This document shows positions 24,441-63,896 of a DNA stretch of 64,000 nt, piece after piece (the first letter of the stretch is position 1; the number at the start of each line of letters is the position of its first letter). The stretch spans positions 186,001 to 250,000 of the forward strand of contig NW_025766981.1 of NCBI RefSeq assembly GCF_003918875.1, written 5' to 3'. The translations under genes and the position numbers were made by a program. The stretch is from Haliotis rubra. Its lineage: Eukaryota. Under the pieces are notes generated by a model. The model saw only the letters and a program-made list of their open reading frames with translations, was not told where the DNA came from and did no database searches.

Positions 24441-24547
24441 CTATATGGTCCATACTCAATTATTTATAGACACGCTACACAGCAGATATATTTCTGCTAC
24501 CTGACTGATATGGCATACACATTGTTAACTTACGTTTTACAATTCAG

Positions 24548-30204: not shown

Positions 30205-33200
30205 TCAATCTGTTAGTTTGGAGATACAGGCCCGACAAGCCTCTCGGATCCTCTCCGATGTAGCTGGCACCCGCAAATCGAAATCAGCGTCACAGCCATT
30301 CTCCTTCCGACAATCCAAGATGGCGGCTTTCAGTGCGAGGTACACCGACATAGCAATGCATATCGACGCTTCCCCGATACCCTGTCATAAAACAAACAAA
30401 CGAAAACAATTTAAATACTTGATGCCGTACACAACGAAATGTTTTGGTTATTGTTGCCATATATTTATTATTTATATTTATTTATGGTGTTTTAGACGGA
30501 GAAGATTTGTCTTTGTGAACATGTCATTTGTTTAACTTGAAATTCTTCACATTCGGATACATGCATGACCTTAAAGATAGACTATGTAGTGTTTAATGCC
30601 TTGGTTAGTAATCGAGCATGAATATCAGATTATGCGCGTTGGATATATAATTATCTTCCGTTTAGGGTCGATAGTTCATAATCGCGGCTATGGTGTTTTG
30701 ATGCTGGGTTTGGTAAAATAAACAAAATATGTTCGGTTCCTCTTTGAACAGATCCTCACAAATGGTTGTATTAGTAATCGGAGACCCTAATCTGCAAACA
30801 ATTAAGTTTGTATTCGCTGTGACGTCGGATAAAGCAGTCTGACACTGGTGATTGCTCCCGAATGGTGCATTATACATTTTCTTACTCTGAATGTTAAATG
30901 GACTCAAGAAATGATTAAAGATATTAGGAAAGTGAAGACTGAAATTCTGTATGTTGTTATTGAGAACGAAAATATTGATTTAGTTGTATACAACAATATT
31001 TTTTGACCAGTATTGATTCGAATCACTCAGTTGGAATGCCAACACGTAGCATATCTATCACAAAATGTTGATGGCGAGTGTCTTTCTTACGATCCTTATG
31101 CTTTTCAAATTTATAATCCAATGCTCTCTCTGTTCTGTACAGCATTTATTCAAACCATTTTACTTTTTAAAGTTCATTTCCGGTATGGGAGCCTGACTCA
31201 TAAAATGAATCTAACATACAATCATAAAAATGTAAAATACCAAGCAAAGTGTCAGGTGCCCAATACCAACGCATCGGCGATGTCTTTGAGCAGCAAATTG
31301 TCAGAAAGGTATGTAACTTACTAAATGACAATCGTCATAAAACTATACTTCATTCAGAACTTTCCGTCCGCCAACTACCGATGTTGGAAACAAACGGGTC
31401 ACGGAAATAATTAATAACAACCACTATTATCCTTTTAAATGATTATCTGTTAAACACATTTTAACAACTCACAATAAACCAATATTATCCCGCCACTATA
31501 CCAAGTTTACTATGGTGGTGATATTAAGCATACTATATATACATACGTTTACATTTTCATTCGTTGTCGTCATTGTGACAGTGTTTTTATTTGTGGTTAT
31601 ATTGTTAAATATGTTAAATGTTAAATACGTTTCTGAATTTATTATGTTCATATTTTTTTGTCATATATTCCCTTTTTCATATTTTTGTGCCAATCATCTG
31701 TGCAGTATGAAATTCCCTTGGGAAAATAAAGCCTTATCTCATCTAATATCGCTCTCTTATTGTGCTGTATTGTCTAATAATGTGCATGGATCGTTGCCTG
31801 TAACATCTGAAGTGTCTCTTCCAGCCAAACATTGCTGAGCAAAGAGTAAAGGTAAAAACCCAAATTAAGATCGATCAATCTGAGATCTAACTTTTGAAGC
31901 AAAGGTAAAAATCAGTTTGATATTAATTTAATGTGGTGAAAAGAGCATTAGAAACCTTAAGGAAACACAGAACTGACCTTGGAGGAGTAAATACCATGTG
32001 GGTTGTTGCTGTCCTTGAGCAAGGACACGTTGAGTTTCCGGGGGATGTTCCTCACGGTGGGTATCTTGTATTCACCAGGTCCCTCCTTCACCATCCATCC
32101 ATCCTCAGACACCACGGCGCTCTCCAGCAACATGTGCCCACAGCCCTGGAAGATGAACAAACTGAACATGTCCGGTATAGTAAGAAACATCGGCGTTGAA
32201 CTTTGAAATCACTTGTGTCCAATATAACAAGCCAGAAACAAGGACAGATACAGGCGGCTAACGGGATCGGGTCGTCAGGCTCGCTGACTTGGTTGACACA
32301 TGTCATCGCATCCCAATCGATAGATCGATGCTCATTATGTTGATGACTTTATTGTCTTGATCATTTACAGACCGCCGCCATATAGCTGGAATATTGCTGA
32401 TACATACTGGTGTTTCTGTAGTGAGGTGAGGTGAGGTGAAATTGGGTTTAACGTCGTGCTTGAGAATTTTTCGCTCATATGACGACGTGCATGCGTGTGT
32501 ATGTGTATGTGCGGCTGCTTGTACTAGCCCAGACTTAAGCTGGTTTTATAGTGCTAGCTCACTGAGATACCATGCCGCAGTGAAGCATGAATATCCCACT
32601 CAGACACAGTATACTAACTCCCAGCCGACCAGTCCTTGTTGCACCCTTTAATGCCGAGCGCCAGGCAGGGACCAACAAGTACCATATTTTAACGTCTTTT
32701 GGTATGACGCGGTCGAGGATCGAATCCGCGACCTTCCGCTCTCCGGGCGGACGCTTGGAGTAGAAAGAGTGTATTCCAAATTTTCTAAAGGAATTGAAAA
32801 AACCTTTCATGCTTTGTAGATGTGGTTGTTGATGACGATCTGCAAAAAATGTCGACTTGTTTGGGGTTGAAGAACTAACAATATGATGTTTTGTCCCCGC
32901 CTATTCACTCTAGGCAACTGACATGTAACCCTTAAATATAAGAACCCGGTGGTTGTGTTTCACAGAGGAAGTTCGCCAAGTGACGCTTCGTGTAGGTGTT
33001 GCATACGTCCGTATTCGATCATCCTGTTTCAGACTCTGTGCCAGACGTCTTCTCTCATCCATGGGCAACAAAAGGGACAGGATGGTTACGTTGTTTAACG
33101 CCATCAGCAAGGTTCCGGCAAAGGCGGCGGTATGTAATGGTTCGAGTGTTGACCAGACAGTCCAGTGATCAAGCAAAGTATTGATCTAGTCTGGATCCAT

Positions 33201-39200: not shown

Positions 39201-42200
39201 TACCAAGCCGCCTCCTGTCATCGACAGTCAATTTTCTGGGCCTACCTGCGCCTCCCTGGTGCTCAATGCCATATCCATTTGCAATATTTTTCAAAACACG
39301 ATAAACAGTGGACAAAGGGATGCCTGTTCTACTTGAAATCACTTTAGCTGATCTGATGTCCTTGTTATAATACTCTAAAATCAACTTCCTCTTCTCTAAA
39401 TTATCCATACGGAGGATCACTGCAAATGTCGTCTGCTAGCAAGTAAACAAAGGGGGATAACTCTTCACAAACTAATGAAAAAGGATTAACGGAGTTGTCT
39501 CTCTTGAATGAAACCAAGCACTTGATAGCTGGTCAAGGTTGTTTATACTAGAAATCCAATTAAACATATTCCTAAAATTCTCAATAATTTCTGGTCATAC
39601 TATATCACCATTGATAGGAGAGAACGTAAGAGCTACTAAGTCACGTGAGTCAAGTTTGTACTGACGGAATGTTGAAGCAATGTGTTACACTTTAACTGTG
39701 AGACACCTACTTTCACCGCCATGCCGTTTAGATCTGTACTGACACTGGCTCCCGTCGACGATGTATTGGGAACAGTGTTGGTGCTCGTCTCGGCGATGTG
39801 GATGGTGCTAGCTGGTATTCCAAGGACATGTGACGCCACCTGGTTTATGATCGGACCACTGTATTAACGTAACTGTTGTTACATCACAGGACATACACAG
39901 AGATGGTTTGGTAGACCATCAACGATTACTGTTACGCAGCAGTGGAAGACTTAAAAATAAGTTCATTATAGTTTTACTTACAGAAACATGAACCAACGAA
40001 ATATTTCAACGGTACTATATACAGCAATATGTCCTAATTTGACATAACACGACACGGTCCTTATGTGACCACCGAAACCACCATATGGTCCAATTGAAGT
40101 CCTTATTTGACTTCTTACAATTATGCCCTGATTTGGCACTATAAGAGACAGTCGCCGACAGCGTGGCTGCTCTATCGAAAAACAAAACGAACTCCTGCCT
40201 AGTTCAGTGACAATGTACACTGTCGCAAGCTATTGCGCAATTCTGCACGTGGTTCACGCACGGCTATCCACCTCTTTTGAAGTGGTGCGTTCGTGCGAAT
40301 GTTTGGGTTTGTTCGGACCTACTGTCCAATTACTATAGTCGTTAAAGATGTTAGGGAGTATCAGAACAGTCACTGGTTTTAGCATCACCTGTATCATCTT
40401 GATGTAGAGTCCCTGGCCCATCTCCGTCCCTCCCTGGGTCAGCAGCACCGAGCCGTCCACGTACACGTGCACCAGAGCACCTGCCTACATACCAACATGT
40501 TCCCGTACAAACATTTGGAAGAACGGTTGAGGAAATAATGGACATCTAACAGGAACGGATTAAACTTTCCGATGGCTTTGTTGCAGTGATTCTGCAGCTA
40601 ACTCAAATATTTTGAAGATAACGAAAATGTACACGTACCTTACAAAGAAATCTGTCTTTGAAGCCGACGCCAAAGCGATAGGGAACCATCGCAAAGCCAC
40701 GTTTCTTCCAACGATTGTGTCTGTAGTATGTCAACACTGAGGTTCAAGTCAATACAACAGATACAGAATATACGTGAATTGCAAAGTCATTGACATATGT
40801 ATAATACCAGAAATAAGCGAAGTACTTCCGAATGATTCGTTTGTTTTCCTGTACACAGAAAATATAAACATAAGAGAAGACGCAGTCCACTCGTCGTGGC
40901 TGGTATGTTTATAAACCCTACAGAGGTGTTTATAAGCTTATGCCATCCTACACTCATACCTAGTAAACTGTTGTACCTTTCTCGCATGTTCAATATGTGT
41001 AACGGTCATATCGGGATAGTTGCACATGACATACCTGTGAAACTGTTGCACCTGACCCTATCAGGAAATACGTAGATAGCTCTTGTACATGGCCCACCTG
41101 GTAAACCCCTTCATCTGATTCACCTGCTAAATCTATACACGTGGCATACCTGTAAAACTGTTGAGCTTGAACCTATCAGAAAATACTTTGATAGCTCTTG
41201 CACATGGCTCATCTGGTAAATTAAACCCCTTCATCTGATTCAACTGCTAAATTCGCACATGTGGCATACCTGTAAAACTGTTGCACCTGACTCACCTGTT
41301 AAACTCCTTCGCCCTTGTATTCCGGACTTCATACTGACTTTCCTCCAGACACTGACGCCAACACCGAGACAGCGTGCAGTTGTCCAGCAACATCGTCGTC
41401 ACCATGACGTCACCCTCTCTCAACATGTTCATCTCACGCACCTGCCAACAGCATTCTACATAGATATCCGATACTAGGATCGGGTGTGGGTGCGGGTGCG
41501 GGTGTTGGTGTTGGTGTTGGTGTTGGTTTGGTGTGGGTTCGAGTTCAAAGGTGCGGTTCGGGTTCGTTGGTTCGGGTGTGGGTGTGGGTGTGGTGGGTGT
41601 GGGTGTTGGTGTGGGTGTGGATGTGTCTGCGAGTGCGTATGCTCTATTGACATGTCATCTAACATTGTCTGGTCCAGACTCGATTATTAACAGACCGCCA
41701 CCATATAGTTGGAACATTGCTGAGTACGGCGTTAAACAACAAACCAACAAAACAAACATATACGACAATATATTGTATTGCCAAAACGAAACCTATCATA
41801 GGCATGTCAGCATAAGGTGTAAATGCCAAATACTGAATGGGTGAGGGTATTGTGGAAGGATTAATCCAGGTCACCAAGTCCAACAAGGAATTATTATATT
41901 CAATATATACCTTGGCTTCAGCCATGTTGAGCCTGCTGGCAACCTTTGTCATTATCACCTCCGACACCAGGAAACTGTCAGGCAGACCGAACCCTCTGAG
42001 GGCTGTATTAGGTGGAGTGTTCGTCTTACACAGGTAGCCCCGTTATACGGCAGTTGGGGTAACGGTACGCTGACTCGAAGTTCAACACACTCAACTGCAG
42101 AACCTGTGAACATATGAAACGTAACTAGGGTAGACATGTGATTATGATGTCGAACACTATTGTCGTAGGGATTGATCTTGTATATTCTGCGAGAAAATAT

Positions 42201-49206: not shown

Positions 49207-49375
49207 CTGTAATGAACGGTGATGTATTAAGTACTTTCTGCCATCACCAACCACCACCGACAAAGTTATCATCCTTCAAGTTTTCATTTTTCTGTTTATA
49301 TCCCCAAGTAAGGGAACATATTATCACGTTATAACTTGAGATTTCTAATTTCAAAGCACATACAATACAGAATTA

Positions 49376-49530
49376 TCACCGGGTATTATACAAGAGGTCA
49401 TGTCACCGGGGATTATACAAGATGTCATGTGACCGGGGATTATACAGAAGGTCATGTCACCGGGGATTATACAGAAGGTCATGTCATCGGGGATTATACA
49501 GGAGGTCGCGTCGCCGGGGATTATAACGGA
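49376..49530. repeat. 27-bp tandem repeat starting exactly where homology between the two gene copies ends
   Basis: Unit like TCACCGGGGATTATACAGAAGGTCATG, ~6 copies. Confidence 0.85.
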
Positions 49531-49829
49531 TGGCATCTTGATAAGGACCACATAGGAGTGAGTGAGTGAGTTTAGTTTTACGCCGCTCTCAGCAATATTC
49601 CAGGTATATGGCGGCGGTCGGACCAGATAAGACGGCATGTAAGTGATGCTGATTATATAGGCCTTGTGAGGTAAACATTAGGTGGCCATTGCAATCCGGA
49701 AGATATAGGGGGTCATGTCACTTGGGACTATTAAAGGTCATTTCAACCAAGAGACCATTTATGTAAAGATATGCCCGTGAGATCTTCGCAACCACTAGCC
49801 GTTACATTGTCACTACACGTGTCTTGTAG

Positions 49830-52800
49830 GTTGGAAGACCCGGTCTGTGAGGGTTCTTGAGGATGCTCTCCGCTGGGTGGCTGCAGGACAAGTCAGGAAC
49901 GTGGCGGTGGGTAGCATAAGTGTTTCTGATAGATACAATACGGCATTGAAGTCTTGAAAAGTACCAGATATTTTCTTTATCTTGCTAAGATGCTAATTCT
50001 GTATTGTATGTGCTTTTAAATTAGAAATCTCAAGTTATAACGTGATAACATGTTCCCTTACTTAAACAGGGATATAAACAGAAAAATTAAAACTGGAAGG
50101 ATGATAACTTTGTCGGTGGTGGTTGGTGATGACAGAAAGTACTTAATACATCACCGTTCATTACAGAGTATTGGGGGCAATCTTCTCAACTCGGCCACTG
50201 TTTCCGATCTCCAACCAGTCTTCCTGGCTCTCGACGCCATGCTCCACGTCGACAACGCAGGTAAGCATAATTCTGGCAGTTAACACACGCAGTGCTGTCA
50301 CCTACAAAACGGTGGCAAAAGGTAGATTTTGTGTGCATTTCAGCTGTCTATATAGAATTGCATTATTTTTCAATGTGAAATTTTCGGTATCCAAGGACAT
50401 GTTCTAAAATGCGTCTTCAATTAGGATTGATGATAAATATAAATAAATAATACATTTAACCTTAACTTTGTGTTAAATAGATGAGTGTATTGCATTACAG
50501 CTATAGTTTTATTTCCCAGTCAAAGGTGAACGCACTCTGCCTTACCGTGACTTGATGAAGTCTACGCCGCCCTTAAAAGGCCTTGACCCCACTGACGTCC
50601 TCCTCTATGTCACCTTGCCCTTCACGAAACAGGTGAGTGTTGATGTAAGAGTTATGGTTTTGTTTTCACATCACACGTATTCCTTATTTAGTTTCAGCGT
50701 TATCAAATTTCTTCGTAAATTGATTTATTTTTGTGGTGACAGGGTGATCACGTGATGTTCTACAAGCAGCCAGTGCGCCGAGGGTTTGACACGTCATACG
50801 TTAATGCTGTAACGGCGATGTCATTTCAACCAATTTCAAGTGATGTTATCGAGGACATTCATTTCACTTTTGGCGGGAAATGTTTCCAGCCGGTTGTGAA
50901 AATTCAAGATCTTCAGCAGGAAATGGCAGGAAAGTGAGTATGAGAAGTGATATTATTGCTTAGCCACAGAGCACCTTCTCGGAGACCTTTAACACGAAAT
51001 AGCCTGAATATGATACTGAAAAGACAAAAGTGATATATTTGCAACTGACAAATGTTGGAACTTATCTTTGGTTCAACGCTGGAATCTAAGATCTCTGAAC
51101 ATCTAAATTCTATTTGATGCCATCTTTCCGACCATTTTCTAATGAATATTTTCCTGTCACGTGCATGTCTCTTACATCTCAGAATATATTCATGTGAATT
51201 ACCTTTTACGCGAATTGTATTTGTGGGATGTCGATGATTGTCTGACTAGTTCATGTTTATTCCTGGCAACTAGCCATGGCATCTGATGTCGGCTAGTAGT
51301 TCCATGTCTCAAATACCTGACTTGTGCTTCTCTTTTTCACAGGAGCTGGTCTCTGTCACTGGTGCCAGCCGTTCTTACCTCCCTTGGTAAAATCCTTAAT
51401 AACAGGACGACCATCACGGTAGACGCCCGGCATGTCGCTATGGCCCAGGTTTTCAAATTCATGTTTGCGGTAGAAGAGGAAGTCAATGGAAAGGTAAACT
51501 AGGCACTTAGCTGAATGCAGTGGGGAGCATTGGTGGTGATTTCAGCGCTAAACATACGATATTAACACACACACACGCACGCATGCACGCACGCACACAC
51601 ACACACACGCACACTCACTCAAAATCAGTACAGTCCGTATCCGACTCATGGCCACTACTGTCGACCTGTTTTCACTCTTGACTGTACCGAGAATTCTTTG
51701 TCCTTTAAAATCGTGCCCGAATACATAATCACCTTGTTTCATTTCTCTGAAGACTGCCCCGAACGGTCCCTCTGCGCTGTCTACTGTGGACTACGAGAGT
51801 ACCCGAGTGTTTGACACTGTCGGTCCAGATCAACCTCCGGAAGATGCCATACGTCGTCCTATCCCACACTCCAGTGCCCTACAGATGACGTGTGGAGAGG
51901 CTGTGTACCTGGACGATATGCCGCGATCTGAAGGTAGCTATGGCAACACGTTTTACCTTCGTGCTACGTATTTAATGCTCTGATCCTGGTGCCAATATTT
52001 GCTTCGTAGAACGTAACCCCCATACATGATTTTCCATATGTCGTACCATCAAGTTATATTATCTGATCATTATGATACTTGTATGCTTATATGTGTCATA
52101 CGGGGTCTTGATTGGGCTGCTTGTCTCAGTGATTTTGCTGTTTTGAGTTACGTCCCTTGGGCACGCCAGTAACCTACGATCGTTGATTAAATCCCTGTTC
52201 ATGTTAGGTCAAAGCCATCTCAACGCCAGTACACGAGAGTTTCACACAATTTCTAAACGTCTTTCCTCCAAAATTAAGCTGACTTTCCATCACATAACAG
52301 GAATACTGTTAAAAGCCTTTTAACCAAACTCACTTATACGTACGATACAAGAGTGTGCATACATTGTAGGTGAACTGTATGCTGGACTTGTGCTGAGCAC
52401 GCGACCACACGCTCGAATCAAGGACGTGGACGTGACTGAAGCTATTGCGTTGCCCGGGGTAACGGGATATGTGGATCACCAGGATGTGCCAGGGAAGAAC
52501 CTGTGGGGATGTGCTATACACTGTGAACAGGCATTTGCTGAAACAGAGGTTAGTTAAGAAACTTAAGGCTATCATTCTATTTTTGTTCAATCTTACAAAG
52601 AAGTTCCATTTATCAGCAGTGTTTGCCCTTAACCCCGAAAAGCTGCAGGCTCTAAGGACCCGGGACCAGTAAGTTGTGTGTCCTGATCAGAATGTGTGGG
52701 CCCTATATTTTAGCTACAATATAAGTAATTCCCAGCAAACCATGCCATAAGGACCCGCAGAACACAAAAGCTGTGGGTCCGGTGGTTTTCAGTCGTCTTA

Positions 52801-55800
52801 GGGCCAAAGGACCGACGTTAATTTCGAACGCTGTTTATCAGTATAGAACCGTTCCTAGTTTTGTAAAAAACTCGGAAGACCTCCCACTCACTCACTCAAA
52901 TGATGTAGTCAATGCTCAAACGCAACCTTATTCGGAATATAATGTAGACATATGAGGATGATACATTTAGGGTTCTGAAGTGGCATGATTCTTGATGCGT
53001 CCGTTATTATATACTAGTAATTAAATTTCTGAGACTATTTCATTAATAACTTGAGTAATTCTTCAGGTGAAGTGTTGTGGTCAGATTATCGGCCTTGTTC
53101 TTGCCGAAGATCGACAGGTGGCGCAGGAAGCAGCAAGACACGTGACGGTGACATACGAGGATCTACCTGCCATTCTTTCTATTGAGGTACTAGCTATATA
53201 TATATATATAGTTCTGTGCCGTAGGTGCGTGTTAATAAGGGCCTGTGCTTCGTTCTATAGAACCTATTTCTGAGGGTTGTTGGTATTACATTACCAGTTA
53301 CGCAGTATACCCTGGTTAAAATGCCACCGTTTGTCCAGGAGAAATTGTGTAATTGGCATAATAACCAGGGAGAAATTACTTTTGTTCCAAACGCCATTGG
53401 CAAATGGCATCATATTCAGTTCGGTGTTATAACCAGTGTATTGTAAGGCTAGGACATCAATTCGGGCAAAAACATGACATTATATCCAGGGTGGCATTAT
53501 AACCAGGGGCATTATAACCAGGGTGCACTGTTATGCAAATATAGACTGAAGAGGCAACAACGGCGTCTGGCCTTCTTGATTCAGACTTCTGTCTCTCACT
53601 CCGCTGTAAGACTGTCCCGTTGGACAACGAATTTTGGCAGACTAGAAAATATTAACATCATTGATGCACTCAACAATTGTTAATATGAATATGGTTCTTG
53701 TATCATACATTTGCAAGCCCTGCAATCATTGCATCAACAAAGTTAACACATACCAATTCATCATGAAAACCTGGTGTTCCAGGACGCCATACGGGAGAAG
53801 GCGTTCTTCACCGAGAAACCAGCCACACCAGCCATCGTCTTCGGTGACGTTGAAGCCGGTTTCGCTGCGTCTGATGACGTCATTGAAGGTCACGTGGACA
53901 TCGACGCCCGTGAACACTTCTACATGGAAAGTCATGGTGTTCTGGTAAAGCCAAGAGCAGAACACAACGAGGTGGACCTCTACTGCACGACACAAAATCC
54001 TTCGATGGCACAGGTATATATCATTGTCTTTGAGTAAGTGAGTATGATGTTACGCTGCTTTTACCAATATTCCAGCAATATCACGGCGAGGGACACCAGA
54101 TTGTACCCATATGGGGAATCGGACAAGGGTCTTCAGCACGACGACTGGACGCTTTAACAATTAGGCTACCCCACCGCCCCAATTACCTTGGAAGACCAAC
54201 ACTGCGTGTCCAGAATGCATCCATATAGTAAAGTGTATTTGGTGTATTGCTGTTATGACATTCAGATATCATACAACTGGGGTGTTTCAATTGTATCTGC
54301 GATCGTATATATAATGCCCAACGTTGCATGTATACAATCCCCGCCCCACACGACCGTGAAGATCCGGGTTAGAATTGGCCCTCAGCAACCCATGCTTGTG
54401 GTAAGAGGCGGCTAACGGAATGGTTGGCCAGGCTCGCTGACTTGGTTGACACATGTCATCGTATCCCAAAAGCGTAGATCGATGCTCATACTGTTTATCA
54501 CTGGACTGTCTGGTCCAGACTCAATTATTTACAGACCGCCGCCACATAGCTAGATTATTGGTGAGTGCAGCGTTTAACAACATACAAACAACACAAACGA
54601 TTGTATACTCCCCTGGAAACTGAGAATACAAAAGTAATCTTCTTTGGGCGATTATCATATCTTGTGAGCAATTAGCATCCTGTTATTGACATGCGCTCTT
54701 ATTATCCTTTTTGCAGAATAGTATAGCTCGGGTACTTGGTATTCCTCTCAACCGCGTGGTGTGTCATGTCAAGAGACTGGGTAAGTTATATGTGGGCTTT
54801 GATCTATCATTTGGTACAACCAACGACAGTTGTAAGAAAACTCGTTGAACATTGCAGTCGGAATGTATTCATGCCCGTGTCTTTACAAAGCTTTGGCTTG
54901 AAAATTCTCTGTAGATGCTAGAACCTTTATCACGCACATACAACTGACGTTTAGTTAGAGATTTTTGTGCAGTTATCCAAGCACTTGCTAGAGGTTTAGT
55001 TACAGATGTTTGAACCGTTATCAAGCACTTGCTAGAGGTTTAGTTACACATGTTAGTACCGTTATCAAGCACTTGCTAGAGGTTTAGTAAAAGATGTCTG
55101 TACCGTTATCAAGCACTTGCTAGAGGTTTAGTTACAGATGTTTGTACAGTTATCAACACTTGCAAGAGGTTTAGTTACAGATGTTTGTACCGTTATCAAC
55201 ACTTGCTAGAGGTTTAGTTACAGATGTTAGTACCGTTATCAAGCACTTGCAAGAGGTTTAGTTACAGATGTTTGTACCGTTATCAACACTAGCTAGATGT
55301 TTAGTTGCAGATGATAGTACCATCATCAAGCACTTGCAAGAGGTTTAGTTACAGATGTTTGTACCGTTATCAACACTTGCTAGATGTTTAGTTACAGATG
55401 TTTGTACCGTTATCAACACTTGCAAGAGGTTTAGTTACAGATGTTTGTACCGTTATAAACACTTGCTAGATGTTTAGTTACAGATGTTTGTACCGTTATC
55501 AAGCACTTGCAAGAGGTTTAGTTTCAGATGTTTGTACCGTTATCAAGCACTTGCTAGAGGTTTAGTTACGGATGTTTGTACCGTTATCAACACTTGCTAG
55601 AGGTTTAGTTACAGATGTTTGTACCGTTATCAAAACTTGCAATAGGTTTAGTTACAGATGTTTGTACCGTTATCAAGCACTTGCAAGAGGTTTAGTTACA
55701 GATGTTAGTACCGTTATCAACACTTGCAAGAGGTTTAATTACAGATGTTTGTACCGTTATTGACACTTGCTAGAGGTTTAGTTACAGATGTTTGTACCGT

Positions 55801-58310
55801 TATCAACACTTGCAATAGGTTTAGTTACAGATGTTTGTACCGTTATCAAGTACTTAGTAGGGCGTTTAGTTACAAATGTTCGTGCGGTTATCTAAGCACC
55901 TGCTAGAGGTTTGGTTTCAGATTTTAGTATCGTTATCAAGCACTTGCAAGAGGTTTAGTTACAGATGTTTGTCCCGTAATCAACACTTGCTAGAGGTTTA
56001 GTTACAGATGTTAGGACCTTTATCAACACTTGCAAGAGGTTTAGTTACAGATGTTAGTACCGTTATCAAGCACTTGCAAGAGGTTTAGTTACAGATGTTT
56101 GTACGGTTATTAACACTTGCAAGAGGTTTAGTTACAGATTTGGTACCGTTATCAACACTTGCAAGAGGTTTAGTTACAGATGTTTGTACCGTTATTAACA
56201 CTTGCTAGATGTTTAGTTACAGATGTTTGTCCCGTTATCAACACTTGCAAGAGGTTTAGTTACAGATGTTTGTACCGTTATCAAGCACTTGCAAGAGGTT
56301 TAGTTCAGATGTTTGTACCGTTATCAACACGTGCAAGAGGTTTAGTTACAGATGTTTGTACCGTTATTAACACTTGCTAGATGTTTAGTTACAGATGTTT
56401 GTACCGTTATCAAGCACTTGCAAGAGGTTTAGTTACAGATGTTTGTACCGTTATCAACACTTGCTAGAGGTTTAGTTACAGATGTTTGTACCGTTATCAA
56501 CACTTGCTAGAGGTTTAGTTACAGATGTTTGTACCGTTATCAACACTTGCAAGAGGTTTAGTTACAGATGTTTGAACCGTTATTAACACTTGCTAGATGT
56601 TTAGTTACAGATGTTTGTACCGTTATCAAGCACTTGCAAGAGGTTTAGTTACAGATGTTTGTACCGTTATCAACACTTGCTAGAAGTTTGATTACAGATG
56701 TTTGTACCGTTATCAACACTTGCAAGAGGTTTAGTTACAGATGTTTGAACCGTTATTAACACTTGCTAGAAGTTTGATTACAGATGTTTGTACCGTTATC
56801 AACACTTGCTAGAGGTTTAGTTACAGATGTTTGTACCGTTATCAAGCACTTGCTAGATGTTTAGTTACAGATGTTTGTACCGTTATCAAGCACTTGCAAG
56901 AGGTTTAGTTACAGATGTTTGTACCGTTATCAACACTTGCTAGATGTTTAGTTACAGATGTTTGTACCGTTATCAAGCACTTTGAAGAGATTTAGTTACA
57001 GATGTTTGTACCGTTATCAACACTTGCTAGATGTTTAGTTACAGATGTTTGTACCGTTATCAAGCACTTGCAAGAGGTTTAGTTACAGATGTTTGAACCG
57101 TTATTAACTCTTGCTAGAAGTTTGATTACAGATGTTTGTACCGTTATCAACACTTGCAAGAGGTTTAGTTACAGATGTTTGTACCGTTATAAACACTTGC
57201 TAGCTGTTTAGTTACAGATGTTTTGTTACGTTATCAAGCACTTGCAAGAGATTTAGTTACAGATGTTTGTACCGTTATCAACACTTGCTAGAGGTTTGAT
57301 TAAAGATGTTTGTACCGTTATCAACACTTGCAAGAGGTTTAGTTACAGATGTTTGTACCGTTATCAAGCACTTAGTAGGGGTTTAGTTACAAATGTTCGT
57401 GCGGTTATCTAAGCACCTGCTAGAGGTTTGGTTTCAGATTTTAGTAATAATAATAATAATAATAAGAGTACTTTTATAGCGCCTCATTCCCATCACCCAG
57501 GGACATGCTCTAAGCACTTGCTTCGCGTTTGGTGGATATGTCAGTACCGTTATCAAGCACTAGTTTGTTTCACACAGATGTTAGGGCCCTTATGGCGGAT
57601 TTGCTTGTCGTTTCGTACAGATGTGTGTCTATTATCAAGGACTTGACATTTCGTACATGTACGTTTAACCTTGTATATAAGGAGCCATGGTAAACTGATG
57701 GTTCTTCGTAATGCATTATGTTCACCATCCGAAACACCCAAACGTATTAATCAATTTACTGTACTTACAGGTGGCGGTTTTGGTGGAAGGGAGACGAGAA
57801 ACGACCTCCTGTCCCAGCCTGTGGCCGTGGCTGCCTACAAGTAAGTCGACGGGAGTAGATATAAATTTCATTCTACAGCCCAGACAATCCCACATCCCAC
57901 ATCCCACCCCAAAGAAATCACACATTTCATGCTCCAATTAGCAAAAACAAAGGAACCAATGACCAGAAATCAAACATCCCACATCCCACATTTCATCCTA
58001 AAATAGTCTCACAATACAGTAATTAGCTAGTAATCCCACACCAAGCTTCATTAAGTATACATGTATATATAATATAGAACAGTTAAGAAAGGATGGCATC
58101 CCACATTTCATCCTAAAATAACCTCACAATACAGTAATTAGCTAGTAATCCCACACCCAGCTTCATTGAGCGTAGTGATACACAATGTCTTCTTCATTAA
58201 GAAGTTAATGATTGATTTTAGTGAGAAAATTATTTATCATGAATGGATGCTTCCCGCTATATTTGAATTACGGTTTGCTTAGTGTCACAACAATTGGAAT
58301 GCTGACTATT

Positions 58311-58371
<61 letters not shown>

Positions 58372-61300
58372 CAGTTAAGAAAGGGCGGCATGACTGGATG
58401 ATACTCAATGCATGGTGTACTCTATATATAGAACAGCTATGAAAGGACAGCGTGACTCTCAGGGGTAAATGTTGAAAGTGGATGCATAGGCGGTGTCTAG
58501 GCGGTGTCGGCGTGTTATTTGATGAGAAACTAATTGAAACCCGCGAGGTGTTAAAGTTTCTCTGTTTGTTCTTGGCTGGGTCGAGTTTCCAAAATAGACT
58601 CAAACATCTAGCGATTTTGTTTCAAGACACATGCGCGCTCTAGTCCATCACGAGTCCATCTCGTGGTAGGAATTTCGTGCACTGTAATGAAACTGAAATT
58701 CGCCTTGTGTCATCAGCAAGAGAAACGCTGTATCACGTTCATGCATCGGTTTTCTCATTATCGTATTGTGTCAAAGTGCTGACAAGTAGCTTGATCTGTA
58801 GGTCAAGATGGTTCGCTTTGTATTACTGTCTATAGAACTGAGATGTAAAAGACCCCTCCGTGTTACGTTTCAACATTTTATCAGTAGAACTGGTGATGAA
58901 AAGAATTTGTTAGTACCGCGACAGTTCGTTTAAGTATGCATACGTGCCACATCATCAATAGCTTTTAACCTATTTAAGGGTTTGCAAAATTCGTTTACAT
59001 CTTAAAGCGCACCACTGTACGCAACGAATTTAGTTGGAATATTTCATGTAATGGTTGTTCACGTTACATTTAATGCTACAAAAACAGAGTACGAACTTAA
59101 AATTGGAAATAATATCGCCTCGGATTTTATTTTAGATTTTGAAACAGCTTCCAAATTAAAAGCGTTATTTATCAACTTTATTCGAAAATCTAAGACATAC
59201 AACGAAACCACGTGTTGTTTGTTGAGTCATGTTATAAAAAATTTCATTTCACTTTTGATCCACTGTTTGGATCACTTTCCATTCAAAACTCAGACACTAG
59301 CTCTGTTGTATTATTGGATATCGATGACATGATAACTATTGTTGGATATCTTATTAAAGCCGATGCTATTGTGGAGTTGCATCGATTCAAAGAAGAATTT
59401 AAGGATATAGGTGAGTATATTCATTATTTATATAGAGAAGATGTTTCAGTACTCTATATCTTTTTTGTTTAATTATTTTGTGCACTTTACCTCATCAAAA
59501 GGACTATCATGTACAGGTATCCTCAATGTTTCCACTCTTATTGAAATTTGTTATTATGTGAGTGCTGTATCAAGTGATAGGTTGTTAGATAGAATTATAG
59601 CAGTTAGGCTAAAACGAGAATGGTATTCGTTTGGAACGTACATTGTCTTTATACATATGCGATAGTGAGTTCACTAGCAAACTGAGGGAGATTTTGTTGC
59701 TAACAATAAATTTTAAGCCGCGTGTTTAATGATCTGTTGAAAAGCTGCAGAACCTAACACGCTAGTACTTTGTATCAACTTCGATCATCACATATGTTAT
59801 CACAATCACGTATTATCTATCATGTGATACAGATTACTTTATCTGTCTGATAAGTGGTTTATAATTATGTTCATGCGATTGTCTTGAACAAAGGTGATAT
59901 TCACGAATTTATACATCTTGATAGGTGTAATAAACCGCTCAGATAATGATCTTGTGTACCGTATTCTAGTCGAGTATGAACAACTATTAAGAATTTCTAC
60001 TGAGAACGAGAAAATTCACAAAAATTTCTTGCTCTCACACTTTTAATATCACCCACATCGCGATAGTGTAGGATAAATTTCATATTTATTGCTATATAAT
60101 ATTATTGCTAAGATGCGGGAAAATACCGCTGTGAACTTAGGGTTAATATATTGTAACAGGCTACCGTCTACATTAAAATAAATTCATGCGTATTACTTTA
60201 AGGTGTTAAGAGTTAAAGTTCCTTTGACAATATCTCATCAATATCGTACCTAAACACATTGTTTAACTAATGTAATTTAAAACTTATTCTGCACAAGCTT
60301 TAAAATATATGTACGTTTAAAATGAGTACTACTAGCATCATAATGTCTTATTAAGATGGACAGCATCTCTGTAGTTATTCTGTGAAGTAATCTAAAACGA
60401 TATATGAATGGTGCTTGCGAGATGTTTCTCCGAGGAAACACGTGATCACCCAACTCACACAGCNNNNNNNNNNNNNNNNNNNNNNNNNNNNNNNNNNNNN
60501 NNNNNNNNNNNNNNNNNNNNNNNNNNNNNNNNNNNNNNNNNNNNNNNNNNNNNNNNNNNNNNNNNNNNNNNNNNNNNNNNNNNNNNNNNNNNNNNNNNNN
60601 NNNNNNNNNNNNNNNNNNNNNNNNCCACTCACGACAGGATACACGCCAGAAATGAATAGTATTGATATAATTTATCATTCGGATGGAGAGTGGAGTTTGA
60701 AAATTTCTGAAAAACGTCACCATTTGAAACTATTATCTTAAATAAATTTTCTGCCGAAATCGTTTACAATTATTTAGGAAAATATTTTGAAACGAGCAAG
60801 AGTAAGTGAGGTTGTCACTATTGGTATAAGTTTAAAAAAAATTATTTCCAAAATTTTCCAAAAAACATTTTTCTGGTGTTGTCCTATTGTGCCACGGAGG
60901 TTTAACATTTATCTTAGGATGAAATGTGGGATGTGGGATTTCTGGTCATTGGATCCTTTGTTTTTGCTAATTGGAGCATAAAATGTGTGATTTTTAGGGG
61001 GTGGGATGTGGGATTACCTGTGCTGTAGAATGAAATTTATATGTACTGACGGGGTAGCTAGTGGTTAAAGCGTTCGCTCGACACTCCGAAGATCCGGGTT
61101 CGAGTCCCCACATGGGTGCAATGTGTGAAGCCCATTTCTGGTGTCCCCCGCCGTGATATTGCTGGAATATTGCTATAAGCAGCGTAAAACTAAACTCACT
61201 CACTCACTTTCAGTAAGTCGATGCATGTTCGACCCAACCTGAAATGTATGCGTGAATAAAGGAAACATCACGTTACACAAGCATTTGCAGCCATATTGAG

Positions 61301-63896
61301 GGGAGGGCCGTCTAGAATGAGCTTCTCATGCTACTCCCGATGTGATCGAACCTGAGGCTTCGGTTTGACAAGTAAACGCTATGCCCACCAGGCTAAGCAA
61401 TAACATCTATGTCGCAGAGAACGTTCTGGAATGACGTCGTGTACACACTATGTTGTCGCTGCTCTAGGTACCGGCGGCCGGTGAGGTGTGTGCTGGACAG
61501 GAGAACGGACATGACCATCTCGGGGAAGGGGCCCAGGTTTCACGCCAAGTACAAAGTAAGGACATCAACATCTAATACTATAGCGCTGTTACTCTGGCAG
61601 GATCTTTAACTGCTTATTATAAAAGAGTTTATCATCTAATGGAGGGTGTTATCGTTGCAATAAAGCAATCTGATAAACTTGGTATCCAAATCTGATAACT
61701 ATGCAAATTACGTCAATCCACGAACTACTTTCACAAAACTCCATACACGCCATGCGAATCCTACAACGTTAACATTTCATTGATGACGTCGTCGCGTGTT
61801 TACATTGTTTGTAAACAAACATGGCTGTCCCCATTCTCAAAATTGGTGATTCTGTAAGAATTGATGACAGAGGTTCTGGAGTCGTTACTGCAGTAATTGA
61901 CTTTGGAAAACATGAAACGGAGTACTTCGTTGAAATTGAGATACGGATTATGAGGGACCATTGAAAGGCAATCGTCTAAGAAAGGTACCAACCAAGGATT
62001 TCGATCTATCGATCAAAATACAGACAACGAATCGGTTCCGTCAGGTATCAGAAACTGATATTGATGAGGTGATTACCCGCAATGAAAATAAAAACACTGC
62101 CAGGAAAAATCCTGCCCGATTGTGTTGTTCTTTTGAGACAGAAAGATCTTATTTTAAGCATGAGTTATGTTTGCACTGTATTAGCGACTAGTCACAACCA
62201 TATGCCGCCGCCATGAACGACCTTCACCTTAGTGTACCGCTAAGTATTCTTACGCGAATGCTCGATTCTCTTCAAATAAATTCACGTACGAGTTGCTTCT
62301 TTTTTTAGAGTAATTTTAAGAATGACATTATATGATAAAGAGATTATTAACCTCGTGTGTTTCCGTATCATTAATATCATATATTAGGAGTAAAAAATAT
62401 GTATTATGCTCGCCAAAGGCACGCATAGTACAATTTTTTATTCCTAATATATGATATTAATGGTACGGAAACACTCTCGGTTAATAATCTCTATATCGGT
62501 TGTATGTCCTTTTGTTTTCCATCCCCACCCTACCATCCTATCTGTAAAAGTCCAAAGATATACACCCAGATTATATTTTCGATTTCAGTTCAAGTTTTTG
62601 GTTTTGACTGCATCTTTCGAAATGTCAACTGTTATACTGAAGATAAGGTTTCAAATGATTCAGAATCATTCTTTAATCTTCAATGATTATCTGTTGTGTA
62701 GGGGCGGTGGGGTAGCCTAGTTGTTAAAGCGTTCGCTCGTCACGCCGAGGACCGGGGTTCGATTCCCTACATGGGTACAACGTGTGAAGCCCATTTCTGG
62801 TGTCCCCCGCCGTGCTATTGCTGGATTATTGCTAAAAGCGACGCAAACCTCAACTCACTCACTCACTCTTCAGGTCGGCTACACCAAAGACGGCCGGATC
62901 CAGAGCGTTGTCATGGACATGTACGTCGACGCTGGTCATGCTGCAGACATCGCCTATGCCGTGAGTATATATTTATTCTCCCAGAAGCTGAAAGCACCTT
63001 TCCTACGTAATGGACAAGAGTGTTCGACATCACCATCACATGTCTACCCTAGTTACGCTTCAAATGTTCACAGTTCCTGCAGATATGTGTGCTGAACTTC
63101 GAGTCAGCGTACCGTTATCCCAACTGCCGTATAACGGGGTACCTGTGTAAGACAAACACTCCTCCTAATACAGCCATCAGAGGGTTCGGTATGCCGGACT
63201 GCTTCCTGGTGTCAGAGATGATAATGACGGAGGTCGCCTGCAGACTCAACATGACTGACATTCAGGTGAGTACTTATACCATCCCTGTTCCCTCACTGGT
63301 ACCCGTGAAGATACGGGTTAGAATTGGTCTTCAGTAACCCATGCTTGCCGGAAGGGGCGACTAACGGCATCGGGTGGTCAGGCTCGCAGACTTAGTTGAC
63401 ACATCCTACCCCAATTGCGAATGTCGATGCTAATGCTGTTGATCACTGGATTGTGTGGTCTACACTTGATTATCTACAGACCGACGCTATATATCTTGAA
63501 TATTGCTGAGTGCAGCGTAAAACTAATCACACAGACACTTACACGTTCCATGCAGGGATGACAAGCATCACACTGGCATTTCTCCAGTTTGCTGACATGC
63601 TCTGGATTGTGTTCTCTTTAGCAACAAATTCTTAAAAGTAGGATGTTTAGTGTAAGTGTTATGGAAATACGAATACGATCCCCTCGCAGAACCATTTACC
63701 CGATTGTTGTTGACCCAAGCATACGATCTATATGGTACGCGTGTTTGCAGGTGCGTGAAATAAACATGTTGAGAGAGGGAGACATGACGGTGTCGTGTAT
63801 GTTGCTGGACAACTGTACGCTGTCCAGGTGTTGGAGTCAGTGTCTGGAGCAAAGTCAGTATGAAGCCCGGACAAAAATGGTGCAGGAATTTAACAG
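49830..63896 (+). CDS. Xanthine dehydrogenase/aldehyde oxidase-family molybdo-flavoenzyme, copy B (no 5' exons in window; runs off the 3' end)
   Basis: 15 intact, phase-consistent exons: 49830-49906 (WKTRSVRVLEDALRWVAAGQVRNVA), 50167-50260, 50520-50632, 50743-50933, 51343-51493, 51753-51933, 52370-52548, 53067-53186, 53783-54013, 54717-54780, 57771-57840, 61468-61555, 62874-62960, 63074-63265, 63751-63896. Same exon structure as copy A. Confidence 0.94.
52617..52833. mobile_element. hAT-like MITE
   Basis: CAGTGTT...AACGCTG ends with a perfect 8-bp TSD TTTATCAG (52609-52616, 52834-52841); a related copy lies at ~13322-13940. Confidence 0.85.
54035..54180 (-). mobile_element. SINE family A (degenerate)
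   Basis: Similar to the other family-A copies. Confidence 0.75.
54353..54600 (+). mobile_element. Family-B SINE-like repeat
   Basis: ACCGTGAAGATCCGGGTTAGAATTGG...GCGTTTAACAAC. Other copies at ~12800-12970, 16225-16385, 25790-25895, 33090-33290 and 63301-63530. Confidence 0.85.
54970..57445. repeat. 43/44-bp minisatellite (~56 copies) in a copy-B intron
   Basis: Unit TTATCAA(G)CACTTGCWAGAGGTTTAGTTACAGATGTTTGTACCG. Confidence 0.95.
57854..61047. mobile_element. Polinton/Maverick-like element (long TIRs, 6-bp TSD) spanning an assembly gap
   Basis: 5'-AGTA...TACT-3' termini; ~140-bp imperfect TIRs (57854-~58003 and ~60910-61047); perfect TSD GACGGG at 57848-57853 and 61048-61053; AT-rich interior; N-gap at 60464-60624. 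No hallmark ORF is visible. Confidence 0.7.
60464..60624. other. Assembly gap (161 N)
   Basis: Run of N. Confidence 1.
61050..61207 (+). mobile_element. SINE family A whose 5' end is interrupted by the Polinton-like element
   Basis: tRNA-like head and (ACTC)n tail; TSD AGTAAGTCGA at 57840-57849 and 61212-61221. Confidence 0.85.
61610..62492 (+). mobile_element. Crypton-like non-autonomous element with a long terminal hairpin
   Basis: The fragment RFRQVSETDIDEVITRNENKNTARK resembles Crypton N-termini; a ~150-bp hairpin lies at 62339-62491. Confidence 0.5.
62701..62868 (+). mobile_element. SINE family A abutting a copy-B splice acceptor
   Basis: Full head; the (ACTC)n tail runs directly into TTCAG|GTC at 62873/62874. 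Confidence 0.9.

What the first reader, a model, noticed from the sequence alone, without database searches (positions are those of the whole stretch)
30205..63896. Two 'headless' XDH/AOX paralogs diverge back-to-back from a 620-bp spacer holding one orphan exon
Seen: inverted homology between the copies ends mid-intron at ~49375 (copy A) and ~49994 (copy B). The spacer contains only a 27-bp repeat, a SINE scrap and one phase-1 exon (49830-49906) with no in-frame ATG (TAG at 49796-49798). I found no 2Fe-2S motif exons (CGEGGCGAC, CGFC, CRCTGY) in the window. Yet splice sites are intact, shared exons show synonymous-only changes, and the introns carry different TEs, so the duplication is old and was under selection. 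Established: XDH/AOX proteins need roughly 330 more N-terminal residues. Inference, most to least likely: central deletion or assembly collapse of a head-to-head pair; an inversion breakpoint with the 5' halves elsewhere; or shared distant 5' exons joined by long-range or trans-splicing, as in Drosophila mod(mdg4). Recombination between the arms would also flip the orphan exon between the copies.
Basis: partly seen in the sequence, partly recalled or inferred. Interest (0 to 1): 0.85.

Follow-up and report, generated by a model that had tools for sequence, protein, structure and literature searches.

The report
Abalone oxidase gene pair missing fronts
Two mirror-image copies of an abalone aldehyde-oxidase-like gene both lack their first third in this assembly. 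They have evolved as complete working genes, so the gap is most likely a young deletion or an assembly fault, not a new way of building a gene.

Summary
The window is Haliotis rubra contig QXJH01000310.1. The structure is as described. Copy A (- strand, 30208-49206) and copy B (+ strand, from 49830) are inverted paralogs of an AOX-like molybdo-flavoenzyme. Their homology ends at 49378 and 49991, and no exon for residues 1-315 lies in the window.

The 'orphan' exon is simply exon 11 of B. It is the same 77 nt, in the same phase, as exon 11 of the 34-exon H. cracherodii relative.

The claim of synonymous-only change is wrong: there are 116 nonsynonymous and 130 synonymous differences. Purifying selection is nevertheless clear (omega 0.24; A branch 0.29, B branch 0.17 in unconverted exons). 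All splice sites are intact. One frameshift in A is an assembly error according to reads.

The A/B split predates the H. rubra / H. asinina split, and the H. asinina ortholog of B is full length. A 4.1-kb spliced RNA contig from a sister species runs from B's exons through exon 11 and about 920 nt further 5'.

The junction 49378|49379 is therefore young or artefactual: a deletion allele, a misassembly, or less likely an inversion. Trans-splicing is not needed. The N run lies inside a B intron.

Ordinary; interest is low.

The parts
30208..49206 (-). Copy A: homologs of exons 12-34 of the 34-exon type-1 AOX-like gene (23 exons). Exons: 49206-49113, 48848-48736, 48629-48442, 48042-47892, 47167-46987, 46835-46657, 46285-46166, 45921-45690, 45278-45215, 44330-44261, 43732-43645, 42297-42211, 42103-41911, 41441-41296, 40720-40639, 40484-40389, 39839-39711, 38021-37947, 37828-37776, 37460-37343, 33511-33425, 32145-31978, 30381-30208.
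   Evidence: tblastn with P0001. Exon-by-exon alignment to B shows AG/GT at every exon. The reading frame is 962 codons without a stop once two single extra bases are set aside.
49207..49378 (-). Remnant of A's intron 11, 172 bp. It is the innermost part of the A arm and is 4% diverged from B's intron 11.
   Evidence: It is homologous to H. cracherodii intron 11 (L003 21365-21567).
49378..49379 (.). Junction in the assembly. A's intron 11 (about 95 bp short of where exon 11 should be) is joined to B's intron 10 (about 450 bp upstream of exon 11).
   Evidence: The X2 contig (record 13, 524 nt) fits 49376-49579 perfectly, and its other 320 nt lie on nothing in 45650-51600.
49376..49525 (+). 27-bp tandem array, 5.6 copies. 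It is an old feature of intron 10 of this gene.
   Evidence: TRF. It is the only copy in about 150 kb of H. rubra sequence, and a homolog sits at the same intron-10 place in H. cracherodii.
49556..49620 (.). SINE fragment (high-copy repeat) in B's intron 10. It is absent in the sister species.
   Evidence: Many copies in the window. Word depth is in the millions, and the X4 joint 49471->49733 skips it.
49830..49906 (+). The 'orphan' exon, which is exon 11 of copy B. It is 77 nt, phase 1, and encodes WKTRSVRVLEDALRWVAAGQVRNVA in the middle of the FAD-binding domain.
   Evidence: Translation. Pfam FAD_binding_5 positions 84-105 of 170. Same length and phase as exon 11 of P0001. Covered as an exact exon by RNA contig X16 record 9.
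50167..63896 (+). Copy B, exons 12-25 inside the window; the gene runs on to exon 34 beyond it. Exons: 50167-50260, 50520-50632, 50743-50933, 51343-51493, 51753-51933, 52370-52548, 53067-53186, 53783-54013, 54717-54780, 57771-57840, 61468-61555, 62874-62960, 63074-63265, 63751-63896.
   Evidence: Exact spliced mapping of NCBI protein P0151 (939 aa) on L001, which is the same contig. All exons are AG/GT.
60464..60624 (.). N run inside the B intron between exons 21 and 22. It does not touch coding sequence.
   Evidence: The letters were not looked up.
30143..30207 (-). Outer end of A/B homology, 62 bp past the stop codon.
   Evidence: blastn of A's 3' flank against B's 3' flank: 30143-30396 aligns to L001 35166-34913 at 90%, and beyond that only SINE matches are found.
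41908..43225 (-). Tandem repeat inside A of exon 23, intron 23 and most of exon 24: rep1 42845-43225 and rep2 41908-42304. The two copies are about 98% alike over the shared ~390 bp and are separated by a (GTGTTG)n microsatellite at 42315-42850. Each exon-24 copy carries a different single extra base.
   Evidence: Probably a false duplication of two haplotypes or a young duplication; not tested with reads.
45876..45877 (-). Single extra base in A's exon 19 (GCCAAAGCC) that would shift the frame. It is an assembly error or a rare allele.
   Evidence: Alignment to B. Contigs of X1 (130 of 130 depth) and X4 (15.7 of 15.7) lack one base here.
24455..25612 (+). Large exon of an MFS transporter gene, the conserved 3' neighbour of the type-1 gene.
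   Evidence: Pfam MFS_1. 78% identical to the MFS gene downstream of P0001 in H. cracherodii. The flank match L003 41373-41628 to window 28281-28021 ties A's 3' flank to that of P0001.

Best explanation
A and B are an old, divergently oriented (head-to-head) pair of complete paralogs. They belong to a Haliotis-specific, AOX-like branch of the xanthine oxidase family, which I call 'type 1'. B's 3' neighbour is the convergent 'type 2' paralog C. A's 3' neighbour is an MFS transporter gene.

Both copies have evolved for a long time as protein-coding genes, with patchy, mostly exon-centred gene conversion among A, B and C.

In this assembly the middle of the pair is missing. That middle should hold exons 1-11 of A, the intergenic region, and exons 1-10 plus most of intron 10 of B, at least about 22 kb in all. 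A's intron 11 is joined directly to B's intron 10 at 49378|49379.

The junction is therefore young or artefactual. It could be:
- a deletion allele carried by the assembled haplotype, with the intact haplotig removed by haplotig purging;
- a chimeric join in a low-coverage Nanopore meta-assembly;
- a very recent fixed deletion.

The 'orphan' exon is B's exon 11, which happens to lie on the retained side of B's breakpoint. No unusual splicing is involved.

Shown: the anatomy, the selection, the orthology, and a full-length RNA contig in a sister species that carries B-type letters where these could be checked.
Inferred: that the two heads once lay between the arms, and which of the three causes produced the junction.
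For: 1. Identity and anatomy. The window equals H. rubra QXJH01000310.1. Exon 11 and its flanks are collinear with the H. cracherodii gene, including the intron-10 array.

2. Both copies look alive. There are 23/23 and 24/24 canonical splice sites, equal exon lengths and no stop codon. A-B omega is 0.24. In the unconverted exons dS is 0.378, with omega about 0.29 on the A branch and 0.17 on the B branch. Binomial tests against neutrality give 6.5e-8, and 2.7e-12 and 5.9e-15 over all exons. A copy headless since an old duplication would have decayed.

3. Age and orthology. In diverged exons 26, 28 and 31, B is 7-8.5% from the H. asinina type-1 gene, while A is 15-19.5% from it and 14-16% from B. 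The duplication therefore predates that species split. The H. asinina gene lies tail-to-tail with a type-2 gene, exactly as B does with C. It is full length: 1301 aa with Fer2, Fer2_2 and FAD_binding_5.

4. RNA. X16 record 9 (4122 nt, from a sister organism about 3% diverged) is spliced. It runs through exons 19-16 and then exons 15-12, which are placed on B. Exons 19-16 are laid on A only because B's copies lie outside the laid stretch, and they carry B-type letters such as 46682-46684. The contig covers exon 11 as an exact 77-nt exon and continues about 920 nt further 5' onto nothing in the stretch. The head CDS of P0001 is 946 nt.

5. Assembly quality. One frameshift is contradicted by reads. 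A 98%-identical tandem repeat flanked by a microsatellite looks like a haplotype duplication. The assembly is a wtdbg plus DBG2OLC QuickMerge meta-assembly with Purge Haplotigs, from a genome with 1.3-1.4% heterozygosity (PMC6774278).

6. Junction. A contig from the same species fits the array perfectly, then stops fitting at 49376.
Against: - No read or contig was shown to carry the undeleted sequence. The remaining 320 nt of X2 record 13 could not be inspected, and tangled k-mer paths between the near-identical arm ends could explain it.
- X1 has normal depth across 49232-49430, which is compatible with a real junction.
- No repeat shared in direct orientation explains a simple assembly collapse at this point.
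- Logan contigs can be chimeric. B's exon 11 shares a 40-nt exact stretch with C's exon 11, so the 5' 920 nt of the RNA contig could in principle be C's head.
- The RNA is from a sister organism, not from H. rubra.
- No type-1 head is annotated anywhere in H. rubra. That fits a real loss as well as an assembly loss.
- Neither H. cracherodii (10 kb upstream of P0001) nor the fetched part of H. asinina shows a head-to-head partner. That the two heads were adjacent is therefore an inference from the two conserved 3' neighbourhoods.
Confidence: 0.75

Rival explanations
1. Young inversion. A recent inversion with one breakpoint in A's intron 11 and the other in B's intron 10 brought the two tails head-to-head. 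The two 5' halves now abut each other elsewhere on the chromosome. Both genes are broken, but too recently to show decay.
For: An inversion between two paralogs lying in the same orientation gives exactly this junction (inference). The intact frames and omega below 1 are compatible with a recent event.
Against: No head exons lie in the window, in L001 or in L002, about 150 kb in all, apart from C's own head. No head-only Haliotis model of 178-567 aa exists in the protein collection. B's tail-to-tail arrangement with C is ancestral, being shared with H. asinina. An inversion would have had to move B's tail and keep that neighbourhood.
Confidence: 0.1
2. Old partial inverted duplication of fold-back or template-switch type. 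One copy was born headless, and the present junction and 612-bp spacer are the original loop. Arm-to-arm gene conversion from a working copy keeps the frames open.
For: The layout is an asymmetric palindrome with a short single-copy centre. Divergence rises with distance from the centre: K is 0.04 in intron 11, 0.12 and 0.09 in the next two introns, and 0.40 after exon 14. Gene conversion is evident.
Against: The junction truncates B, yet B's ortholog in H. asinina is full length and a B-type headed RNA exists in a sister species. In exons not recently converted (9-20% apart), A still shows omega of about 0.29, no stop codons and intact splice sites. A working copy would itself need a head, and none is present.
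Confidence: 0.05
3. The junction is real and fixed, and the headless copies are still used. Their 5' exons would come from elsewhere by very long-range cis-splicing or by trans-splicing to B's exon 11, as in Drosophila mod(mdg4). For example, C's exons 1-11 lie on the same strand as A, about 73 kb upstream.
For: Both copies are under purifying selection with intact acceptor sites at their first retained exons. A and C lie on the same strand. The RNA contig joins exon 11 to sequence that is not in the stretch.
Against: No read evidence for such joints. Orthologs carry their heads in cis. No A-specific RNA contig covers exons 12-15 of A in X16: depth is 0 over 47839-49430. Simpler causes explain everything seen.
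Confidence: 0.03

Closest known systems
Lineage-specific XDH/AOX gene clusters (for example the vertebrate AOX1-4 clusters that arose from XDH by duplication; my own knowledge, not tested here)
   Same: Large multi-exon molybdo-flavoenzyme genes duplicated locally with conserved exon structure. There are 34 exons here, with identical exon lengths between copies and species. The substrate-orienting Arg880 is lost and the catalytic glutamates are kept, as in aldehyde oxidases.
   Different: This is a Haliotis-specific branch, only 36-44% identical to canonical XDH. The copies are arranged in inverted orientations (A-, B+, C-) rather than as a simple tandem array. Two of the three lack their 5' third in this assembly.
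Palindromes and inverted paralog pairs kept similar by arm-to-arm gene conversion (for example human Y-chromosome palindromes; my own knowledge)
   Same: Inverted arms around a short unique spacer. The arms are a mosaic of nearly identical and old segments: exons are 1-6% or 9-20% apart, and intron K ranges from 0.04 to unalignable.
   Different: The conversion tracts are short and mostly exon-centred, and they also involve the third paralog C: exon 16 differs by 1.1% between B and C. Overall the arms are old and diverged. The present centre is a truncation, not the original palindrome centre.
Haplotype-related errors in long-read assemblies of heterozygous genomes (false duplications, lost alleles after haplotig purging, residual indels)
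   Same: A frameshift contradicted by reads, and a 98%-identical tandem repeat at a microsatellite. The assembly is a QuickMerge meta-assembly with Purge Haplotigs, from a genome with 1.3-1.4% heterozygosity.
   Different: No direct repeat explains a collapse exactly at 49378|49379. A real deletion allele is at least as likely as a pure software error.
mod(mdg4)/lola-type trans-splicing of shared 5' exons to 3' cassettes on either strand
   Same: Only the superficial layout: 3' gene parts on both strands without their own 5' exons nearby.
   Different: There are no shared 5' exon block, no evidence of joints, and the orthologs have ordinary cis heads.

Membership tests
Xanthine oxidase family (XDH/AOX molybdo-flavoenzymes) | Molybdopterin-binding part: Ald_Xan_dh_C, MoCoBD_1 and MoCoBD_2 | tested here: met
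   Pfam hits on single exons of A and B. P0151 aligns to human XOR residues 398-1311 with E 1.5e-240.
Xanthine oxidase family (XDH/AOX molybdo-flavoenzymes) | Catalytic glutamates (human E803 and E1262; bovine E802 and E1261) | tested here: met
   Both are conserved in the alignment of P0151 to 2ckj.
Xanthine dehydrogenase proper (as against aldehyde oxidase) | Substrate-orienting arginine (human R881, bovine R880) | tested here: not met
   Replaced by Ile in B ('FLQICV' against 'IMERAL'). The genes are therefore AOX-like, not XDH proper.
Xanthine oxidase family (XDH/AOX molybdo-flavoenzymes) | Two N-terminal 2Fe-2S domains (Fer2, Fer2_2) | tested here: not met
   No match to residues 1-313 of P0001 or to the head of P0154 anywhere in the window. 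They are present in the orthologs P0001, P0152, P0153, P0154 and the H. asinina 1301-aa gene. The lack concerns this assembly, not the family.
Xanthine oxidase family (XDH/AOX molybdo-flavoenzymes) | Complete FAD-binding domain (FAD_binding_5 plus CO_deh_flav_C) | tested here: not met
   B starts at FAD_binding_5 position 84 of 170 (exon 11) and A about 25 residues later. CO_deh_flav_C gives a weak hit.
Inverted paralog pair with gene conversion | Inverted arms with a mosaic of recently homogenised and old segments | tested here: met
Fold-back / template-switch inverted duplication with the spacer as the original loop | The junction is as old as the arms, and the truncated copies have been without function since birth (neutral decay) | tested here: not met
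   Omega is 0.17-0.29 on both branches, the frames are open and the splice sites intact. B's ortholog is full length in H. asinina after the duplication.
Trans-spliced loci of the mod(mdg4) type | A common 5' exon block joined to alternative 3' cassettes, shown by transcripts | tested here: inconclusive
   One RNA contig from a sister organism joins exon 11 to about 920 nt of unseen 5' sequence. Contigs cannot tell cis from trans. Orthologs have their heads in cis.

The most novel reading that the evidence does not exclude
The junction is real and fixed in H. rubra, and the two headless copies stay under selection because they still make full-length enzymes with borrowed 5' exons. A would use the head of the upstream same-strand paralog C across about 73 kb. 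B would be trans-spliced at exon 11.
Probability: 0.03. Interest if true: 0.85.

Novelty: new member of a known kind. Interest (0 to 1): 0.22.

Why it matters
The main value is as a caution. A structure that looks like an exotic gene architecture is best explained by a young deletion allele or an assembly fault in a heterozygous, low-coverage Nanopore meta-assembly. The NCBI models built on it are artefacts of that state: a 939-aa 'headless' protein for B, and three fragments for A.

On the biological side, the locus documents an abalone-specific, AOX-like three-gene cluster (A-, B+, C-). The inverted duplication is older than the H. rubra / H. asinina split, and exon-centred gene conversion acts among all three members. 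That is useful for anyone studying molybdo-flavoenzyme evolution in molluscs, but it is of an ordinary kind.

Tried and rejected
1. Copy A as a decayed pseudogene. This was my first reading, based on a +1 base in exon 19, +1 bases in both exon-24 copies, and the three-way split of the NCBI models. I rejected it. Reads contradict the exon-19 insertion, every splice site is intact, and omega on the A branch is 0.25-0.29.

2. A nested in a giant intron of B, with B's head left of 30 kb. No head exon lies in 1-30205. That region holds an MFS gene and transposons.

3. An inverted triplication (DUP-TRP/INV-DUP) with C as the full copy. C is a much older paralog, of the 'type 2' kind, orthologous to P0152 and P0153.

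4. A search for head-only gene models with P0001:1-324. No Haliotis hit; the best was 47% to Patella.

5. An attempt to fetch the H. asinina type-1 gene's 5' side. That protein is not in the searchable collection, so I could not look beyond L005.

6. Flank synteny for B's 3' side and P0001's 5' side gave only SINE matches.

7. Joints to 49556-49565 with sides of 20-25 letters are SINE flank noise, and I did not use them.

8. Earlier scan notes by words found nothing about head exons elsewhere in this genome.

9. The junction and the exon-24 repeat could therefore not be examined further.
Full report
**What the window is.** A 77-residue exon of copy B found a 1303-aa relative, P0001, at 90% identity. 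Sources name it 'xanthine dehydrogenase/oxidase-like' of Haliotis cracherodii. The NCBI protein P0151 of Haliotis rubra (939 aa) matches copy B exon by exon at 97-100%. Its contig is QXJH01000310.1 of GCA_003918875.1, fetched as L001, and it is 100% identical to the window. The window is therefore H. rubra, record positions 186001-250000. I number exons after the 34-exon H. cracherodii gene, which I mapped exactly.

**Check of the observation.** A self-comparison confirms the inverted arms.
- The innermost block is A 47883-49378 against B 51502-49991, 82.7% identity. Further out only exon-centred blocks align.
- The spacer is 49379-49990, 612 bp.
- It holds a 27-bp array (49376-49525) and a SINE piece whose word depth in read sets runs into the millions.
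- It holds one 77-nt exon at 49830-49906. An in-frame TAG lies at 49796-49798 and there is no in-frame ATG.
- tblastn with P0001 and with the full-length H. rubra paralog P0154 finds nothing for residues 1-313 in the window.

One claim fails. The changes between the copies are not synonymous-only: there are 116.5 nonsynonymous and 130.5 synonymous differences.

**The assembly gap.** The N run 60464-60624 lies in the B intron between exons 57771-57840 and 61468-61555. P0151 is encoded exactly across it, and the two exon lengths equal those of H. cracherodii exons 21 and 22. Nothing coding is missing there. The public record has letters at that place. I masked them in all scripts and did not read them.

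**The 'orphan' exon.**
- It encodes WKTRSVRVLEDALRWVAAGQVRNVA, which matches FAD_binding_5 positions 84-105 of 170.
- It has the length (77 nt) and phase of exon 11 of P0001.
- The stretch 49385-50217 is collinear with H. cracherodii intron 10 (including a homolog of the 27-bp array), exon 11 and intron 11.

It is simply exon 11 of B. The A arm ends in intron 11, about 95 bp before the place of its own exon 11. The assembly thus joins A's intron 11 to B's intron 10.

**Are the copies alive?**
- B has 24 exons with AG/GT borders and an open frame from exon 11 to the stop.
- All 23 shared exons of A have AG/GT borders and the same lengths as in B. The exceptions are an in-frame 3-nt difference and two single extra bases.
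- One extra base (45876, exon 19) is absent from contigs of the same species (X1, 130 of 130 depth) and of a sister organism (X4). It is an assembly error or a rare allele.
- The other lies in a 98%-identical tandem repeat of exons 23-24, flanked by a microsatellite. That looks like two haplotypes placed in tandem; I could not test it.
- With the two bases set aside, A reads 962 codons without a stop.
- A-B dN is 0.0545, dS 0.2255 and omega 0.24. With H. cracherodii as outgroup, the A branch has 48 nonsynonymous and 58 synonymous changes and the B branch 24 and 48. Both are far from neutral (p = 2.7e-12 and 5.9e-15).

**Mosaic divergence.**
- Exons 12-14, 16-18, 22, 27, 29 and 32-34 are 1-6% apart between A and B.
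- Exons 15, 19-21, 24-26, 28, 30 and 31 are 9-20% apart, as far as either is from H. cracherodii.
- Intron divergence rises from K 0.04 next to the junction to 0.40 after exon 14. Beyond that the introns cannot be aligned.
- This is patchy gene conversion on an old duplication. C takes part too: exon 16 differs by 1.1% between B and C.
- In the unconverted exons dS is 0.378. Omega is about 0.29 on the A branch (p = 6.5e-8) and 0.17 on the B branch.
- Both copies have therefore been independent, constrained coding genes for a long time.

**Age, orthology and neighbours.**
- On the H. rubra contig the order is MFS gene (+), A (-), B (+), C (-). C is P0154, a full-length 'type 2' paralog lying tail-to-tail with B.
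- In H. asinina a type-2 gene (P0153) lies tail-to-tail with a full-length 1301-aa type-1 gene carrying Fer2, Fer2_2 and FAD_binding_5.
- In diverged exons 26, 28 and 31 that gene is 7-8.5% from B but 15-19.5% from A. It is therefore B's ortholog. The A/B duplication predates the species split, and B had its head after the duplication.
- In H. cracherodii the type-1 gene is followed by an MFS gene. A's 3' flank and the window's MFS exon match that neighbourhood, apart from a local inversion of the MFS block.
- Both 3' neighbourhoods are thus old. This is why I infer an ancestral head-to-head pair.
- A/B homology ends 62 bp past the stop codon.

**RNA.** No run on record as RNA holds the stretch. 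Several small runs of a second organism (coded B, about 3% diverged in DNA, presumably a sister abalone species) look like transcriptomes. In X16 one 4122-nt contig is laid in spliced pieces.
- Exons 19, 18, 17 and 16 are placed on A. This is only because B's copies lie outside the 6-kb stretch I was allowed to lay. The contig carries B-type letters there, for example at 46682-46684.
- Exons 15, 14, 13 and 12 are placed on B with 0-9 mismatches.
- Exon 11 is covered as exactly 77 nt, judging by bin depth (3.51 = 9.06 x 77/199).
- The contig continues about 920 nt further 5' onto nothing in the stretch. The head CDS of P0001 is 946 nt.
- No contig lies on A's exons 12-15.

A caveat applies. Such contigs can be chimeric, and B's exon 11 shares a 40-nt exact stretch with C's exon 11. 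However, a contig that runs unbroken through several exons nearly identical among the paralogs argues that one transcript dominates.

**The junction.**
- A contig of the same species (X2 record 13, 524 nt) fits 49376-49579 without a mismatch, and its other 320 nt lie on nothing in 45650-51600. Its fit stops at the A-arm boundary.
- That suggests another continuation next to the array, which is unique in about 150 kb of available H. rubra sequence.
- I could not see those letters, and the near-identical arm ends may tangle k-mer paths.
- X1 shows normal depth across the junction bin.
- In the sister organism both arms are present, and B's intron 10 has the array but not the SINE.
- The assembly was made from modest Nanopore coverage with wtdbg and DBG2OLC. 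It was merged with QuickMerge, scaffolded with RNA, and then reduced with Purge Haplotigs. Heterozygosity was 1.3-1.4% (PMC6774278).

**Explanation and rivals.** The best explanation is an old, complete head-to-head pair whose middle is missing from this haplotype or assembly because of a young deletion allele or a misjoin (confidence 0.75). Within that, I cannot choose between a polymorphic deletion, a software error and a very recent fixed deletion.

| Rival | Confidence | Main objection |
|---|---|---|
| Young inversion | 0.10 | No heads are found in 150 kb, and no head-only models exist |
| Old fold-back duplication, headless from birth | 0.05 | Contradicted by selection on both branches and by B's full-length ortholog |
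| Long-range or trans-splicing | 0.03 | No supporting observation |

**Comparison, novelty and score.** The proteins belong to the xanthine oxidase family. The Moco domains and both catalytic glutamates are present. The XDH arginine (human R881) is replaced by Ile, so the genes are AOX-like. That agrees with an earlier scan note. The cluster is a new member of a known kind: a lineage-specific XDH/AOX paralog cluster with inverted members and gene conversion. The headless state is most likely not a property of the working genes. Interest is 0.22.

Noticed in passing
window 45876-45877: The assembly has one base too many in A's exon 19 (GCCAAAGCC), which splits the NCBI gene models of copy A. 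Contigs of X1 and X4 lack it. Residual indel errors of this assembly can fake pseudogenes.
   Followed up: yes
window 41908-43225: A tandem repeat of exon 23, its intron and most of exon 24 in copy A. The two copies are about 98% alike and are separated by a 540-bp (GTGTTG)n microsatellite. Each exon-24 copy carries a different extra base. It is likely a false duplication of two haplotypes.
   Followed up: partly
window 51753-51933 and 46987-47167; L002 31517-31708: Gene conversion also involves the older paralog C. Exon 16 differs by only 1.1% (B-C) and 2.2% (A-C), although most C exons are 15-35% away.
   Followed up: partly
window 24455-26562 and 28021-28281; L003 41373-50447: The MFS transporter gene next to A is the conserved neighbour of the type-1 gene in H. 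cracherodii. Its orientation relative to the oxidase gene is flipped, so there is a local inversion between the species.
   Followed up: partly
window 50833: The 3-nt insertion in B's exon 14 (PISSDV against PGSDV) is absent from the X1 contig and present in X2. It is a polymorphism or a conversion variant.
   Followed up: no
window 49472-49732: The sister organism's contig joins 49471 to 49733. The SINE piece and its flanks in B's intron 10 are therefore specific to H. rubra or polymorphic.
   Followed up: no
window 33677-37313, 54949-57446, 7339-8407: Large minisatellites. A 27/54-bp unit repeated about 134 times sits directly after A's exon 31. A 43-bp unit repeated about 57 times sits in B's intron 20. 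A third array lies near 7.3-8.4 kb.
   Followed up: partly
window 38449-39435 (-), 20006-20938 (-), 5297-6013 (-): Tc1/mariner transposase remnants (HTH_Tnp_Tc3_2 plus DDE_3) in A's intron 28 and left of the MFS gene. A zf-RVT ORF of a retroelement lies at 5.3-6.0 kb.
   Followed up: partly
window 60464-60624 / L001 20226-20386: The public record fetched as L001 shows no N at the place of the window's N run. The run therefore seems masked rather than a true gap. I masked it in my scripts and did not read it.
   Followed up: no
window 57841-61467: B's intron 21 is 3.6 kb, against 528 bp in A and 265 bp in H. cracherodii.
   Followed up: no
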